Source: Octopus bimaculoides
Taxonomy: Eukaryota
Direction of reading: 5' to 3'
Assembly: GCF_001194135.2 (NCBI RefSeq)
Contig: NC_068990.1
Location: forward strand, 14,401,896 to 14,459,406
Length of the DNA: 57,511 nucleotides
This document shows positions 30,446-42,561 of the stretch, piece after piece. The translations under genes were made by a program, and so were the position numbers. Position 1 is the first letter of the stretch; every line of letters begins with the position of its first letter. The notes beneath the pieces are model-generated. The model had not been told where the DNA came from. It ran no database searches and saw only the letters and a list, made by a program, of their open reading frames with translations.

Positions 30446-30892
30446 CTTCTGAAATATTAAAGCAAGCCTTCACCTGCACCCACACAAAATAGTCATCTGG
30501 TACACTTCCTTCTACAATTCCTTGAGATTCCAAAATAATCTTCACAGCTGTCGCCTTTGGATAATTATTCAATATAAGGGGTCCTGTAATGTTGGTACCT
30601 CCCACTGTCTTCTGGAATTCATCAGAGCCAGGTTTTTGCACAAGAACTGTTACCTTACCAACACTACCCCACATGTCGACTTCAAGCAGTTCAACTCCTT
30701 CAGGTTTATCTGTTAATTTTATAGTGACACTTGGTTTTGGTTCAGAAGGTGATTTTGGTACTGGAACCCTCCAACCAGGCAAGTCTGGTCTGATATTAGT
30801 TATGGGATAGTCTGGTGTGTCAGGAGATGATGATATAAAGGAATCAGGAATGATATTTATATCATTCATACCTTCTCTAATCACACAAGGTA
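30446..30892 (-). CDS. Mucin exon: repeated 149-aa module, copy 4
   Basis: Acceptor ttttctttccag|TA CCT TGT; donor GAA G|gtaag; 447 nt. Confidence 0.93.
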
Positions 30893-31827
30893 CTGGAAAG
30901 AAAACAAACCAATATAAATTGCAATGTTATCAATTGTACAAATCAATATATAACATTAGGATAAACATTACTTAAAATTTATTTAGTTTAAATAAACATA
31001 TATTAAATAAATTTCAAATTATGAGTTTAGATAAATAAATTATATCAATCTATGTTAACTATATATCTCAATTACACAATTATAAATGTAATGATGTTTA
31101 TTCCTAACGAAACAGCTGTAGAAATTAATTAGATTATGATCTATCAAATATTGGGATAGACATTACTTAAATTAATTGATATATATTAAATGAATTTCAA
31201 ATTATGAATTTACATTAATAAATTATATTAATTTATATTGACTAAATATCTTAATTACATAATTTAAAATCAATAATGCTTATTCCTCAAGAAACAACTG
31301 TTGAAAGTAATTACATTATGATGTATAAATAAAATTTATGCCATTCTGCTTTCTATTCTAAATATATGTAAGTTCTTGGTTGATTTTTAACTGATTACAT
31401 ATATGCATGCGAGCTTCTACCACCTGAATTTACTGGAATCTTTTAACATGCTGAAGGTTAATGACTTGTTATTAACTGTGCTCGTAATTAACATGGATGT
31501 ATACTTTTTGGTGTTTTATACATCATCGTTCTTTATATAGATGTATGCTAACATATGTAAAGTATCAAATGACTAATGTATAATTTATAGACAAGTTTTT
31601 ACTTGATAAGGTGGTAAAAATTATTGCTGTACTTTTATTTTGTTACCTACAGTAGGGACAAAAATCATAGTAGCTCTCGCTGATAGTTGAACAAAGAATG
31701 CTGGGCAAAGAAACTCATTTAGTTTATTGAGGTTCATTTTGAATATGTTCATTCCAAACAACTAACTGAGGCTAAATTTAAGAGATGTTTAAATACAAAT
31801 GTTAAAATGGCATATTCCCATTTATAC

Positions 31828-31950
31828 CTGTTGTTGTTGTCTGTGTAGTGGATTTCGGGACAAGACTTGTTGATGTAGTTGTTTCTAAAAGATGAGTTGT
31901 AGCAGTGGGTGTTTCAACAGATGGAGTGGTCACTATAGCTGTTGTACTTG
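31828..31950 (-). CDS. Mucin 123-nt S/T linker exon, copy 3 (an alternative in-frame acceptor would start it at 31959)
   Basis: Acceptor gtgacatcag|CA AGT; donor ACA G|gtataa. Encodes ASTTAIVTTPSVETPTATTHLLETTTSTSLVPKSTTQTTTT. Confidence 0.8.
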
Positions 31951-32034
31951 CTGATGTCACTATTTGCATAAAGAAAGGGAAAATATTGTGTAATTAATAT
32001 AAAAATTAAATTTATTATCACAAATATCAACTAA

Positions 32035-32067
<33 letters not shown>

Positions 32068-32111
32068 CGTATAGGAACAAAAAGATGACATCAGAAAAGA
32101 CAAAGATGATG

Positions 32112-32509
32112 TAATGGACTTCATTAGCTTATAGCTGTTTCTGTTATAAGATGTGATGGCCTGTTAGTTGAGTCGCTGGGTAACATCCTGTAGCTTCATC
32201 AGAGCCCCAAATATGAAGTGCACCCTCTCTGCATGACTACATGTCTGCATAATTTTTCTTTTCTTTTATTGCATTCTGATATAAACACATCTGCATACAT
32301 TTTTTCTACATTTGGACGGATCTTACCATAGGATTCAGCATAAGATTTCTCACTCATAACACGTGTAGGTTCTGAAAATGTAACTTTCCCAAATAAAGTG
32401 CACTTCGTATGCAAGGCTATGATAAAGCTACAGGATGTCACCCAGGGACTCCACTAACAGTTCACCACATCTTATAGCAGAAATAGTTGTAAGCTATGGA
32501 AGTTCATTA
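32112..32509. mobile_element. Foldback/MITE-like element with imperfect TIRs of about 85 bp
   Basis: 32112-32196 aligns with the reverse complement of 32425-32509; TA at both ends. Confidence 0.8.
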
Positions 32510-33718
32510 GGTAACATTAGGTTTTTCCAGTGTCATCTCTTTATTTGTATTACAACTCTATGCTCAAATAACATTGTGTTCTGGACCATGTATATCTTGA
32601 GTTCTGCTCCAGGTTATTAATCTTACTATGCCTAAGCAAAATGCTAAAATATATATACATACACATGAATATATAAGTATGTATGTAAGTATACCTGCAT
32701 GTATGTATGTACTTATATATATATATGTCATGGACTCTCCCATCGTTAGACAATATATGAGGGTTTGGCAATTTTTAAACAGACAACCACACAGATGATT
32801 TGTTACTAATGATTAAATGTTCGTGTAGACATAAGCCCTCTCCCTCCATCAAACCAACATTATCTGTACAAGTGCACCATGTGTCACATGTCAGATGACG
32901 AAATGATCACAGAGCAATGTGAAATGAAGTGCTTTGCTCAAGCACACAATGCAATGCCTGGTCTGGGAATTGAACACACAATCTTGCAATCATAAGTGCA
33001 ACACCCTAACCATTAAGCCATGCACCTTTATATGCACATGTGCATGTGTATACATATGTATGTATGTAGGCATATATGTATATATGGAGACATATTTACA
33101 TTTGCATGTAAGTATAAATGCATGTATGTATGTATGTATGTATGTATGTATGTATGTATGAGTAGCAGTGTGACAGCAACACAAACATTACTTCATAAAT
33201 TGTATTTTATGATACAGCAACAGAAATACAAGTGTCATTTGTTAAATATAGTCTTTCGCTTGATAAACGTATTTTATGTTAGAGCAACAAAATGCAAGTA
33301 TCATTTGAGAAATTTTATGGTAGAGTGACAGAAATAATAATGTTATTTATTATATGTGTTCTGACAGAGCTAAAAAAAACTAACAGAGTTAAACCTCAGT
33401 TATGGAAAGAATATATTTGTGACAATATAATGTTCTTTTCTACTCTAGGTACAAGGCCCGAAACACATATATATGACGGGCTTCTTTCAGTTTCTGTCTA
33501 CCAAATCCACTCACAAGGCTTTGATTGACCCAAGGCTATAGTAGAAGACACTTGCCCAAAGTGCCACACAGTGGAACTAAGCCTGGAACCATGTGGTTGG
33601 TAAGCAAGCTACTTACCACACAGCCACTACTGTGCCCATAAGTAATCAAACATCAAACACCGGGTAATTTTATCACAATAATCAATAGCATCATTATAAT
33701 CAATATAATCATTCTTAC

Positions 33719-40005: not shown

Positions 40006-40175
40006 AAGATTTGTGTTCCAAATACCAGTTTAATTGCAACAGTTATTTTACTAAATATCTCATTATTTTCAAAATTAATTGAAAAGTGGCAGTTTATTTT
40101 TATAGAAATATGGTAACAAAAGGATTAAGTAATTAATCAAAATATTCTGTAATCACAGGAATGTTTAAAATTTAC

Positions 40176-40217
40176 CTCTTGTTGCAAGACTTGTTGTGGG
40201 ATGAACTGTTCCTGTAA
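40176..40217 (-). CDS. Mucin 42-nt microexon, copy 1 (VTGTVHPTTSLATR)
   Basis: Acceptor tgtttttccag|TT ACA GGA; donor AGA G|gtaaat; phase 1-1. Paralogous to 36358-36399. Confidence 0.8.
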
Positions 40218-40502
40218 CTGGAAAAACAAAGGAATATTTACTTTTTAATAAGATTCTATTAATTTCTACTGAAGTTTATGACAGTTATAATTATACTCCT
40301 GATTGCATAAAATGGGTATCACAGAATTATAATTTTTTTATTTTTTTTTTGAGCGAGGAGTGTAGGATCTGCAAATAAAACAGGCAACCATTAATTAGAG
40401 GTGAGTCGTGAGTTTGGTCAAGACATCCCAAGCTCAAATGACTAAATACATCTAATAATGAGGAGCCAATGTGGGAGTTGATTTCCAAAACTAGTGATTA
40501 AT

Positions 40503-40580
<78 letters not shown>

Positions 40581-40736
40581 AAGTCAATCGCCACATCAAA
40601 GTGGCTGTTCCATGTTACTACTAATTTAACCCCAGGCAGTTCTTTGGTGTGGTGATTGACTTTACTTGTTAGTATAGTTACTACTCTGAGCTCCTCTTGA
40701 CATTTTACAACTAGCTATTATGCTTATATATATACA

Positions 40737-40946
40737 TACAAAGGAGTGCTGAAAAGTTCCTGCCTTTAAGGGTATTCCAAAAGGCCTAGTTGGAGGACCA
40801 GCGTTCTCAGTTTTTTTACAGGCCTTAGGAAAACAGAAGGAGCACTACAATCTGAGAGGGTAATATCATAAATAAAATCATAATTAATGGGTCCTCCTGT
40901 ATTTTCTTGTACCCAAAGCCAGGAACTTTTCAGCACCCCTTTGATA
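40737..40946. mobile_element. Mariner-derived MITE, copy 2
   Basis: Same TIR and internal sequence as 5376-5595. Confidence 0.85.
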
Positions 40947-42114
40947 TATAATAATTAACTAAATATATGATTTAACTGAAATTGGTTTAGGTTTATCATA
41001 CATTTTGTGAGAAATAATGTTTGGAATACTGACCATTCCACCATAATTATAGACATAACTGCAACCAATATTAACATCAGTTTGGAGAGTATTGTAGTTC
41101 ACTTGAAGCATTGTGAATTTTTTGTGAAATATAATGTGCCTTGAATGGCACAACAATGCAGAGTGGAATATAATAACTGTTATAATTTGGCCGTTGCCAG
41201 TACCGCCTGACTGACCTTCGTGCGGGTGGCACGTAAAAGCACCCACTACACTCTCTGAGTGGTTGGCATTAGGAAGGGCATCCAGCTGTAGAAACTCTGC
41301 CAAATCAGATTGGAGCCTGGTGTAGCCATCTGGTTTCACCAGTCCTCAGTCAAATCGTCCAACCCATGCTAGCATGGAAAGCGGACGTTAAACGATGATG
41401 ATGATGATGATGATTCATAGTCTGATATAATAATATTTCGGAAAATAAAAATCCCTTCTTCAGATATCGCTAGGAATTGATCCAGTCACTGCTGTGCCCA
41501 TGCTGGGGCACTGCCTTGAAGGGTTCAGTCAAACAACTTGACACCAGTATTTATTTTCTTAAAGGCAACTACTTATTTCATTGGCCTCTTTTGCTGAAGC
41601 ACTATGTCATGGGGACATAAACAAACCAACTCCACTTGTCATGTGATAAGGTAGTGGTGGTGGTGGACAAACATAACAGGCTTTCAGTTTCTGTCTATCA
41701 AATCTACTTCCAAGCTTTTGTCAGCCCAGGTTTATAGTAGAAAACACTTGCTTAAGGTGCCAGGCATTGAACTGAACCTGGATCTTATGTGGCTGGGAAG
41801 CAAAATTCTTAGCACCACATTCATCACTCTGTGAGGTTCCACTAGTACACACACCAAAATATACCAATGTCATTTTGTACTCATAAGGATTGTAATAAAA
41901 TAATGGTTATGAAATATCTATTTGAGTAACTTTTTAGATTTAATGATCTCGTAAATCCATAATGAATTTAAGAGAGTAAGTATCAAAATAATGACCACTT
42001 TAAAGTAAATATTGAATGTTAAATGTTTTATCTAAAAAAACATCATATTTCAATGAATTATTAACTATTTCATTTATAAAACTTACAATCAACAGTCAAT
42101 ATAATAATTCTTAC

Positions 42115-42561
42115 CTTCGGAAATATTAAAGCAAGCCTTCACCTGCACCCACACAAAATAGTCATCTGGTACACTTCCTTCTACAATTCCTTGAGATTCC
42201 AAAATAATCTTCACAGCTGTCGCCTTTGGATAATTATTCAATACAAGGGATCCAGTAATGTTGGTACCTCCCACTGTCTTCTGGAATTCATCAGAGCCAG
42301 GTGTTTGCACAAGAATTGTTACCTTACCAACACTACCCCACATGTCGACTTCAAGCAGTTCAACTCCTTCAGGTTTATCTGTCAGTTTTATGGTAACACT
42401 TGGTTTTGGTTCAGAAGGTGATTTTGGTACTGGAACCTTCCAACCAGACAATTCTGGTCTGATATTAGTTATGGGATAGTCTGGTGTTTGGGGAGTTGAT
42501 GATATAAAGGAATCAGGAATGATATTTATATCATTCATACCTTCTCTAACCACACAAGGAG
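42115..42561 (-). CDS. Mucin exon: repeated 149-aa module, copy 1 (divergent discoidin/F5-8 type C-like)
   Basis: Acceptor tgtttttcag|CT CCT TGT; donor GAA G|gtaag; 447 nt, phase 1-1. Runs CVVREGMNDINIIPDSFISS...WVQVKAC. Confidence 0.93.

What the first reader, a model, noticed from the sequence alone, without database searches (positions are those of the whole stretch)
30446..42561. Four-module putative lectin (discoidin-like) cassette built into a polymerising mucin
Seen: four single 447-nt exons encode near-identical 149-aa modules with only two Cys, one at each end (C-x4-GM...IPDSFISS ... WVQVKAC). They sit between the TIL/VWC block and PTS2, spaced by short S/T linkers. Established: F5/8 type C (discoidin) domains typically open with C-x-x-x-LGM-x-x-G-x-IPDxxIxASS and close with xRxELxGC, the two Cys forming a clasp disulfide; many bind glycans or lipids. 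Inference: these are highly divergent discoidin-fold adhesion modules, giving a CTCK-dimerised mucin a multivalent binding array (8 modules per dimer) that could cross-link mucus non-covalently or trap microbes. Vertebrate MUC2/5AC/5B place CysD domains here instead. I cannot tell whether this module family has already been described.
Basis: partly seen in the sequence, partly recalled or inferred. Interest (0 to 1): 0.78.

Follow-up and report, generated by a model that had tools for sequence, protein, structure and literature searches.

The report
Divergent discoidin-like modules in octopus mucin
Four nearly identical exons in an octopus mucin-like gene encode a very divergent, database-invisible version of the discoidin (coagulation factor 5/8 C-type) domain. 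This extends a known habit of mollusc and worm mucins rather than revealing a new kind of system.

Summary
On the minus strand there are four 447-nt, phase 1-1 exons (42561-42115, 38113-37667, 34165-33719, 30892-30446). They alternate with three 123-nt Ser/Thr-rich linker exons. The cassette sits between a TIL/VWC block and a long PTS exon, and a C-terminal cystine knot follows. The assembly gap lies inside an intron and cannot change the reading frame, though it could hide extra units.

Pfam sees nothing in the module. Three other results point to a divergent F5/8 type C (discoidin) domain:
- A 21-sequence alignment gives an AlphaFold2 model with pLDDT 92. Its best PDB matches are neuropilin b1, factor VIII C2, factor V, CASPR2 and retinoschisin.
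- A profile-profile comparison with canonical discoidin domains aligns end to end, Cys to Cys (88.9 % probability).
- The best profile hit in PDB sequences is a CBM32.

Homologues occur in a chiton "mucin-2-like" protein (7 copies) and a flatworm mucin with three VWD-C8-TIL units (4 copies).

Lang et al. 2016 already reported F5/8C domains as characteristic of lophotrochozoan mucin-like proteins. This is therefore a new variant of a known kind. Lectin function, inclusion in mRNA and N-terminal polymerisation remain untested. The canonical ligand-binding loops appear shortened.

The parts
55054..57510 (-). PTS1: a long Ser/Thr/Pro-rich stop-free stretch (63 % S+T+P) that runs off the window's end. 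This is the upstream part of the same gene.
52961..53401 (-). Stop-free stretch holding a Cys-rich exon followed by an S/T tail. It looks TIL-like by eye, but Pfam gives only a weak EGF-type hit.
51184..51498 (-). Stop-free stretch holding a TIL-domain exon (PF01826, E 2.6e-5, above the cutoff).
48737..49132 (-). Stop-free stretch holding a TIL-like/VWC-like Cys-rich exon (PF01826, E 0.002, below the cutoff).
45030..45414 (-). VWC exon (PF00093, E 2.5e-6) with an S/T tail. The donor follows 45030 in phase 1 and joins M1 in frame.
42115..42561 (-). Module 1: 447-nt phase 1-1 exon encoding a 149-aa discoidin-like domain.
38799..38921 (-). Linker exon 1: 123 nt, phase 1-1, 41 aa, 54 % Ser+Thr.
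37667..38113 (-). Module 2: 447-nt exon, 144/149 aa identical to M1.
35443..35565 (-). Linker exon 2: 123 nt, phase 1-1.
34784..35094 (.). Assembly gap inside the intron between linker 2 and module 3. It is flanked by (TA)n and a dispersed repeat.
33719..34165 (-). Module 3: 447-nt exon, the most divergent copy (116-120/149 identical to the others). It has lost the NIT sequon.
31828..31950 (-). Linker exon 3: 123 nt, phase 1-1.
30446..30892 (-). Module 4: 447-nt exon.
23711..28768 (-). PTS2: a large Ser/Thr/Pro-rich exon. The acceptor TTGACAG|TT precedes 28768, in frame with M4. Two assembly gaps interrupt it and the 3' end is approximate.
20560..20901 (-). Stop-free stretch holding a further PTS exon. 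It matches the annotated O. vulgaris protein P0053.
18641..18895 (-). Stop-free stretch holding the C-terminal cystine-knot exon (DAN E 8.7e-6; Cys_knot E 2.6e-4).
15470..15625 (-). Stop-free stretch holding the last coding exon (…ANGKTHRHSFSRIVSCACNVCTGSEPM, then stop). It matches the C-terminus of O. vulgaris P0053.

Best explanation
The four exons encode a strongly divergent subfamily of the F5/8 type C (discoidin) domain. Together with three 41-residue O-glycosylatable linkers they form a cassette of about 719 residues. The cassette lies in the C-terminal half of a gel-forming-mucin-like gene of an Octopus species close to O. vulgaris. The order is PTS1, TIL/VWC block, [module-linker] x4, PTS2, PTS3, cystine knot.

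Shown: the exon structure, the coding constraint, the fold class, the domain context, and the same module/PTS alternation in mucin-like proteins of a chiton and a flatworm.

Inferred mechanism. Each module folds into a compact beta-barrel clasped by a Cys3-Cys144 disulfide and carries one or two N-glycans. These barrels break up the extended O-glycosylated rod. They act as non-covalent interaction nodes that bind glycans or other ligands in mucus, on surfaces or on microbes. Valency comes from tandem repetition and from cystine-knot dimerisation.

The identity as a discoidin-like mucin module is about 0.85 likely. The binding-node function is about 0.4 likely.
For: Exons and selection.

Fold: AF2 on the shallow 5-sequence alignment gave pLDDT 65, with galactose-binding-like hits. 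With 21 diverse family members it gave pLDDT 92.2 and pTM 0.87. Foldseek against PDB then ranks neuropilin-1 b1, FVIII C2, FV, CASPR2 discoidin, retinoschisin and CBM32 first (E 8e-6 to 1e-3, TM 0.58-0.67).

Sequence-level homology:
- The family profile's best PDB hit is CpGH89 CBM32-6 (E 0.0085). Neuropilin b2 comes next.
- hhalign against a canonical discoidin profile gives 88.9 % probability and E 2.4e-6 over 128 columns. N-terminal Cys aligns to N-terminal Cys and C-terminal Cys to C-terminal Cys. GM..I.D..I, the Arg of ARL, and W-x-P also align.
- Reversed and 20 column-shuffled controls reach at most 0.8 %.
- The canonical profile is genuine: it recovers FVIII, NRP1/2, FV, lactadherin, RS1 and DDR1 at E 1e-50 to 1e-123.

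Context in the window: TIL, VWC and cystine knot by Pfam; PTS.

Context elsewhere:
- P0005 (Macrostomum lignano) has three VWD-C8-TIL units plus four modules.
- P0003 (Liolophura sinensis 'mucin-2-like') has seven modules alternating with PTS.
- P0010 has a Pfam-positive F5_F8_type_C domain directly before a module.
- The ENA contig L004 has six modules with mini S/T linker exons.

Literature: F5_F8 domains are characteristic of lophotrochozoan mucin-like proteins (PMC4948705).
Against: - No Pfam F5_F8_type_C hit for any of 21 members, even at E <= 10.
- A small canonical discoidin HMM does not see the modules either.
- TM-scores are only about 0.6. The structure is predicted, not solved, and I could not read its coordinates to measure the Cys-Cys distance.
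- In the hhalign alignment the three discoidin 'spike' loops carry deletions of 4, 4 and 8 residues, and the F-x-G-N-x-D motif is missing. The canonical binding surface may therefore be absent.
- There is no transcript or protein evidence for this gene. In O. vulgaris the orthologous region is annotated as fragmented models, and no annotated protein in the searched databases contains the module.
- The N-terminal VWD region is outside the window.
Confidence: 0.7

Rival explanations
1. The fold and gene are as above, but the modules are structural only. They would be folded, largely unglycosylated 'knots' that punctuate the PTS rod. They could aid granule packing, protease resistance or homotypic contacts, in the way CysD domains are thought to act. 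They would have no specific external ligand.
For: The canonical discoidin spikes appear truncated and the F-x-G-N-x-D motif is missing. The most conserved family positions (R35, P36, W41, P54, C144, GNV) align with fold-determining core positions of canonical discoidin domains rather than with variable binding loops. The modules sit between PTS stretches, as CysD domains do in vertebrate mucins (PMC4948705).
Against: Most characterised discoidin and CBM32 domains bind something, such as glycans, lipids, collagen or peptides (established knowledge). Strong purifying selection covers the whole module, loops included: dN/dS 0.06 against the related species. Loop alignment by hhalign is unreliable.
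Confidence: 0.3
2. The resemblance to discoidin is fold-level only. The module would belong to another branch of the galactose-binding-domain-like superfamily (CBM-like, IFT25-like) or be convergent, not a descendant of F5/8 type C domains.
For: The low-confidence first model matched IFT25, CBM86 and CBM29 about as well as CBM32. Pfam PF00754 does not match. Sequence identity to canonical domains is about 17 %.
Against: With the confident model, animal discoidin domains rank first. The profile-profile alignment is collinear over the whole domain and aligns both clasp cysteines and the GM..I.D..I, R and W-x-P motifs, while the controls fail. A canonical F5_F8_type_C domain sits next to a module in P0010. 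F5/8C domains are typical of mucins in this clade.
Confidence: 0.1
3. The four exons are not part of the mucin mRNA. They would be pseudo-exons, alternatively skipped cassette exons, or a separate nested gene.
For: There is no transcript evidence. No annotated cephalopod protein with the module exists in the databases searched. The O. vulgaris annotation of this locus does not join the pieces.
Against: The exons lie on the same strand as flanking mucin exons and between them. All eight junctions keep phase 1. Splice sites are canonical and conserved in the related species' contig L001. dN/dS is 0.06-0.24. The same module/PTS alternation occurs inside single annotated proteins of a chiton and a flatworm. 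The O. vulgaris models here look poor: an antisense 1646-aa ORF is called on the PTS exon.
Confidence: 0.07

Closest known systems
F5/8 type C (discoidin, FA58C; Pfam PF00754, including CBM32) domains in invertebrate mucin-like proteins: lophotrochozoan mucins and insect hemolectin (Lang et al. 2016, PMC4948705)
   Same: A beta-barrel of about 150 aa bounded by an N- and a C-terminal Cys. It is embedded in a VWD/TIL/VWC/PTS/cystine-knot protein of a lophotrochozoan. The best structural and profile matches are to this family.
   Different: The Pfam model does not detect it. About 17 % identity to canonical domains. The spike loops appear shortened and the F-x-G-N-x-D motif is absent. It is arranged as a regular alternation with 41-aa PTS linkers, one exon per unit, downstream of the VWC block. 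In hemolectin the domains sit between VWD units.
CysD (Mucin2_WxxW) domains of vertebrate MUC2/MUC5AC/MUC5B
   Same: Small, non-PTS, disulfide-stabilised globular domains interspersed in the PTS regions of gel-forming mucins (PMC4948705). The presumed role as interaction nodes is similar.
   Different: Unrelated fold and sequence. The module has no WxxW motif, 2 Cys instead of about 10, and no Pfam hit.
TFF modules interspersed with PTS in the Xenopus integumentary mucins FIM-A.1 and FIM-C.1 (PMC7177656, seen in the list; abstract only)
   Same: A lectin-type small domain is used instead of CysD as the Cys-containing module of a skin mucin.
   Different: A different fold (trefoil) and a different lineage. 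I did not read this paper beyond its abstract.
Discoidin/FA58C-containing marine adhesive proteins, e.g. sea-star footprint proteins (PMC9382459)
   Same: Secreted invertebrate proteins that combine glycan-binding FA58C or galactose-lectin domains with vWD/vWC modules and heavily O-glycosylated partners. That paper proposes sugar-lectin interactions for cohesion.
   Different: Those are canonical, Pfam-detectable domains in echinoderm adhesives. No homology beyond the fold was tested here, and the octopus gene's tissue of expression is unknown.

Membership tests
F5/8 type C (discoidin) domain, Pfam PF00754 | Match to the Pfam PF00754 HMM at or above the gathering score | tested here: not met
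   No family at E <= 10 for the window modules. None of the 21 family members hits PF00754. A small canonical HMM also misses them.
F5/8 type C (discoidin) domain, Pfam PF00754 | Domain of about 150 residues bounded by one N-terminal and one C-terminal Cys (the clasp disulfide) | tested here: met
   Cys is at positions 3 and 144 only, in all four modules. C144 is invariant, and the N-terminal Cys is present in all 15 family sequences that cover that column. Both align to the clasp cysteines of canonical domains. The disulfide itself is inferred, because the model's coordinates could not be inspected.
F5/8 type C (discoidin) domain, Pfam PF00754 | Distorted jelly-roll beta-barrel fold | tested here: met
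   The AF2 model has pLDDT 92.2 and is all-beta. The top Foldseek PDB hits are NRP1 b1, FVIII C2, FV, CASPR2 DS, retinoschisin and CBM32, with TM 0.58-0.67. This is a predicted structure only.
F5/8 type C (discoidin) domain, Pfam PF00754 | Detectable sequence homology to canonical members | tested here: met
   hhalign gives 88.9 % probability and E 2.4e-6 over 128 collinear columns. Controls reach at most 0.8 %. The profile against PDB sequences hits CBM32-6 at E 0.0085. The strength is moderate, not overwhelming.
F5/8 type C (discoidin) domain, Pfam PF00754 | Conserved core motifs (LGM..G.I.D.QITASS; ARL; AW.P; WLQVDL; TQG; F.GN.D; LR.EL.GC) | tested here: inconclusive
   Counterparts are present for GM..IPD..I, RP, GW.VP, P.V.I.L, GNV and Y.V..V.AC. 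The F.GN.D motif is absent, and the aromatic residue before 'LQVDL' is missing.
F5/8 type C (discoidin) domain, Pfam PF00754 | Protruding loops ('spikes') that form the ligand-binding site | tested here: inconclusive
   The hhalign alignment shows deletions of 4, 4 and 8 residues at the three spike positions relative to FVIII C2.
F5/8 type C (discoidin) domain, Pfam PF00754 | Binding of a glycan, lipid or protein ligand | not testable with these tools
   This needs a recombinant protein and binding assays.
Gel-forming mucin | Long Pro/Thr/Ser (PTS) domains | tested here: met
   PTS1 is at least 819 aa with 63 % S+T+P. PTS2 spans about 5 kb of coding sequence. There is a further PTS exon and three PTS linkers.
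Gel-forming mucin | C-terminal cystine knot, with VWC/TIL domains upstream | tested here: met
   DAN E 8.7e-6 and Cys_knot E 2.6e-4. VWC E 2.5e-6. TIL E 2.6e-5. The C-terminus matches the O. vulgaris 'CTCK domain-containing protein' P0053.
Gel-forming mucin | N-terminal VWD-C8-TIL units (D1-D2-D'D3) for multimerisation | not testable with these tools
   The gene runs off the window at PTS1. No VWD is detectable in the window. The flatworm homologue P0005 has three VWD-C8-TIL units.
CysD (Mucin2_WxxW) | WxxW motif and about 10 conserved Cys; Pfam Mucin2_WxxW match | tested here: not met
   Only two Cys, no WxxW motif and no Pfam hit.

The most novel reading that the evidence does not exclude
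The modules define a spiralian-wide domain family (mollusc plus flatworm) that derives from discoidin and has not been classified. In these animals it would replace CysD as the PTS-interrupting unit of mucins. It would work as a built-in lectin that binds the mucin's own or neighbouring O-glycans, giving reversible, multivalent self-cross-linking of mucus or of an adhesive secretion.
Probability: 0.2. Interest if true: 0.6.

Novelty: new variant of a known kind. Interest (0 to 1): 0.4.

Why it matters
Discoidin domains in lophotrochozoan mucin-like proteins are already on record. The surveys that found them relied on the Pfam model, which is blind to this subfamily. Domain maps of mollusc and flatworm mucins therefore probably under-count such modules. 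Octopus annotations in particular break this gene into pieces.

The family now has a confident structural model and a 21-sequence seed alignment, which could become a new Pfam/InterPro entry. If the modules do bind glycans, they would offer a simple, testable model of how invertebrate mucus or adhesive gels gain non-covalent cross-links. This is an incremental gain for mucin evolution and cephalopod biology, not a new principle.

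Tried and rejected
- Single-sequence Pfam and PDB searches of the module found nothing significant. There were only weak CBM4-2 xylanase hits at E 0.4.
- The word-indexed protein search found only one near-identical raw ORF. With the family alignment it found only one more. The exhaustive HMMER search was what opened the family.
- One hit from that search, P0015, has a repetitive sequence and matches only profile positions 23-75. 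I judged it a false positive and dropped it.
- The AF2 model from the shallow 5-sequence alignment was too uncertain to rank folds (pLDDT 65). The 21-sequence model superseded it.
- I looked for canonical discoidin exons and for VWD exons in the window. None were found.
- I tried to reach the O. vulgaris orthologues of the modules through the CTCK protein's locus (L005). The 10-kb flank stops short of them, so presence in O. vulgaris and its annotation could not be checked.
- I asked whether the Macrostomum homologue is one of the known adhesive proteins Mlig-ap1 or Mlig-ap2. The published architectures do not fit: KR-rich regions, C-type lectin and 17 EGF modules in one; LDL, TSP-1 and 46 long repeats in the other. 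Rejected.
- Literature searches for mucin + discoidin + cephalopod, and for the SRA run accessions, returned nothing.
- A suspected mariner-type transposase fragment at 21666-21457 got no Pfam support.

Full report
**Observation**

The gene lies on the minus strand. Four exons of exactly 447 nt are present: M1 42561-42115, M2 38113-37667, M3 34165-33719 and M4 30892-30446. Each is preceded by a polypyrimidine tract and CAG, and followed by GTAAGA. Each starts and ends in phase 1. Each encodes 149 residues with only two cysteines, at positions 3 and 144.

Amino-acid identity between copies is 116-144 of 149, and M3 is the outlier. A family HMM run over all six frames finds these four copies and no others in the window.

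Between the modules are three 123-nt exons: 38921-38799, 35565-35443 and 31950-31828. They are also phase 1-1 and encode 41-residue linkers with 54-56 % Ser+Thr.

The exon upstream of M1 carries a VWC domain and an S/T tail. It ends in phase 1 after 45030. The large PTS2 exon begins at 28768 behind TTGACAG, in frame with M4. The cassette is therefore 4 x 149 + 3 x 41 = 719 residues, and every junction is in phase.

**The assembly gap**

The N run 34784-35094 lies within the 1277-nt intron between linker 2 and M3. A (TA)n microsatellite adjoins it on one side. On the other side is a copy of a dispersed repeat that also occurs in 41414-41188 and 29778-29476.

Both flanking exons are complete with their splice sites, so the reading frame does not depend on the gap's length. 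All units are phase-symmetric, so extra module+linker units hidden in the gap would also stay in frame. Four is therefore a minimum count.

**Is it real coding sequence?**

- The exons are 84-97 % identical to each other, while 300 nt of flanking intron is only 46-74 % identical.
- A Logan contig from a related species (L001) is about 81 % identical in DNA across linker exon, intron and module exon. It keeps the splice sites.
- Against L001, M2 shows 30 synonymous and 8 non-synonymous differences (dN/dS 0.06). M1 gives 0.07, M4 0.11 and M3 0.24.

This is clear purifying selection.

**Whose gene?**

The C-terminal exons match 'CTCK domain-containing protein' P0053 of Octopus vulgaris. The O. 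vulgaris chromosome segment L005 is collinear with window 23320-10669, at mostly 89-93 % DNA identity. The window therefore comes from an Octopus species close to O. vulgaris.

In O. vulgaris the locus is annotated in pieces. There is a 1050-aa upstream model with a weak VWC hit, an antisense 1646-aa ORF over the PTS exon, and the 212-aa CTCK protein. L005 stops short of where the modules should be.

**Gene context in the window**

In order on the minus strand:
- PTS1 (at least 819 aa, 63 % S+T+P, running off the window).
- Cys-rich exons, of which one is TIL above the Pfam cutoff and one below.
- A VWC exon above the cutoff.
- The cassette.
- PTS2 (about 5 kb).
- A further PTS exon.
- A cystine-knot exon (DAN/Cys_knot).
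- The terminal exon.

No VWD is detectable in the window. The N-terminal multimerisation region, if present, lies beyond it. MUC6 and MUC19 also lack the fourth VWD (PMC4948705), so its absence here is not odd.

**What is the module?**

Pfam gives nothing at E <= 10. A single-sequence PDB search gives only noise-level CBM4-2 hits.

An exhaustive HMMER search of 1.84 billion representatives found 24 proteins. They include:
- P0003, 'mucin-2-like' of the chiton Liolophura sinensis, with seven modules alternating with PTS.
- P0005 of the flatworm Macrostomum lignano, with three VWD-C8-TIL units, further TIL/VWC domains and four modules near the C-terminus.
- P0010, in which a Pfam-positive F5_F8_type_C domain directly precedes a module.
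- Many raw ORFs from eukaryotic contigs in metagenome assemblies.

One such contig, L004, carries six modules in 20 kb. Mini-exons encoding about 24 S/T-rich residues separate them.

The family consensus is C-x3-[DE]GM-x2-P-x2-IPD-x2-I … RP-x3-GW-x-VPVP … P-x-V-x-I-x-L … GNV … Y-x-V-x3-V-x-AC. R35 and C144 are invariant.

**Fold**

With only the five near-identical sequences, AlphaFold2 reached pLDDT 65. Foldseek then returned a mix of galactose-binding-like domains: IFT25, CBM32, CBM86 and CBM29.

With the 21-sequence alignment the model reached pLDDT 92.2 and pTM 0.87, and is all-beta. The best PDB matches became animal discoidin domains: neuropilin-1 b1, factor VIII C2, factor V, CASPR2 and retinoschisin, followed by bacterial CBM32 modules (E 8e-6 to 1e-3, TM 0.58-0.67).

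**Sequence-level homology**

The family profile's best PDB hit is CBM32-6 of C. perfringens GH89 (E 0.0085). The next is neuropilin-1 b2, which is not significant.

It is genuine. It recovers FVIII, neuropilins, FV, lactadherin, retinoschisin and DDR1 over its full length at E 1e-50 to 1e-123.

hhalign of the module family against this profile gives 88.9 % probability and E 2.4e-6 over 128 collinear columns. The two clasp cysteines, GM..I.D..I, the Arg of 'ARL' and 'W-x-P' are all aligned. A reversed profile and 20 column-shuffled profiles reach at most 0.8 %.

None of the 21 members hits Pfam PF00754 on its own.

I conclude that this is a remote, unclassified branch of the F5/8 type C family.

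**Function**

Nothing here tests binding.

Points in favour of a binding role:
- The family it derives from is a binding module almost everywhere (established knowledge).
- Selection is strong across the whole module.
- Tandem copies on a cystine-knot protein would give multivalency (inference).

Points against a canonical site:
- The alignment places deletions of 4, 4 and 8 residues at the three 'spike' loops of FVIII C2.
- The F-x-G-N-x-D motif is missing.
- Loop alignment at 17 % identity is weak evidence either way.

Two N-glycosylation sequons (NIT at 101, NIS at 146) are present. M3 has lost the first.

My preferred mechanism is that these are folded, disulfide-clasped barrels that interrupt the glycosylated rod and serve as non-covalent interaction nodes. 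The main rival is a purely structural, CysD-like spacer.

**Comparison with what is known**

Lang et al. 2016 (PMC4948705) state that the F5_F8 domain is characteristic of lophotrochozoan mucin-like proteins. They also report that insect hemolectin carries F5_F8_type_C domains between VWD units, and that CysD domains lie in PTS regions of vertebrate MUC2 and MUC5. The general idea of discoidin modules in a spiralian mucin is therefore already known.

What is different here:
- The subfamily is invisible to the Pfam model those surveys used.
- It has a regular one-exon-per-unit alternation with PTS linkers, downstream of the VWC block.
- It is shared by a cephalopod, a chiton and a flatworm.

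Related analogies are TFF modules in frog skin mucins (PMC7177656, abstract only) and FA58C or galactose-lectin domains in sea-star adhesive proteins (PMC9382459).

**Verdict**

The discoidin-fold reading is supported. The lectin function, mRNA inclusion and polymerisation are untested. This is a new variant of a known kind, of moderate interest.

Noticed in passing
window 41414-41188, 34783-34522, 29778-29476 (minus-strand orientation): Three copies of a short dispersed repeat of about 100-230 nt, 92-95 % identical to each other, sit in introns of the mucin gene. One abuts the assembly gap. It looks SINE-like but was not classified.
   Followed up: partly
L005 (O. vulgaris OX597823.1, 80236008-80262215), genes at 1-1076, 3509-8792 (-), 10001-16208: The O. 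vulgaris annotation splits the orthologous mucin gene into three models. These are a 1050-aa upstream model, a 1646-aa ORF called on the antisense strand of the PTS exon, and a 212-aa CTCK protein. No annotated protein in the searched databases contains the module.
   Followed up: partly
window 57394-55157 and 28407-23711, minus strand, alternative frames: The PTS exons are open in two or three frames at once. The off-frames read as Cys/Asn-rich pseudo-proteins (…NNCCTISNN…). This is an artefact of ACN-rich repeats and could mislead ORF-based gene callers. The same region shows a strong GC skew of +0.4 on the plus strand.
   Followed up: no
P0010 residues about 520-1200; P0014, P0017, P0018: P0010 carries several shorter Cys-to-Cys modules of about 115 aa (CL.EMK..GVVP…VVAC) after its one full module. 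These may be a further reduced derivative. P0014, P0017 and P0018 have a Ser/Thr/Pro-rich insertion inside the module, between its N- and C-terminal halves.
   Followed up: no
L004 (ENA ERZ21867824 ctg91886l), 1199-2433 and 9189-11940: An unidentified eukaryote in a metagenome assembly has at least six modules, 54 % identical to the octopus ones. They are spaced only about 320 nt apart, with mini linker exons of about 24 aa. This is a much more compact version of the same cassette.
   Followed up: partly
window 21666-21457 (-): A 70-aa open stretch (…FVPCLLTEDQKQSEL…) in the intron after PTS2 reminded me of a mariner-type transposase N-terminal region. Pfam gave no hit, so this is unconfirmed.
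   Followed up: yes
window: 11 N runs (e.g. 7012-7707, 16028-16627, 25425-25511, 27505-27672): The window is a gap-rich scaffold. Two gaps fall inside the PTS2 exon, so its length and frame continuity are not determined.
   Followed up: no
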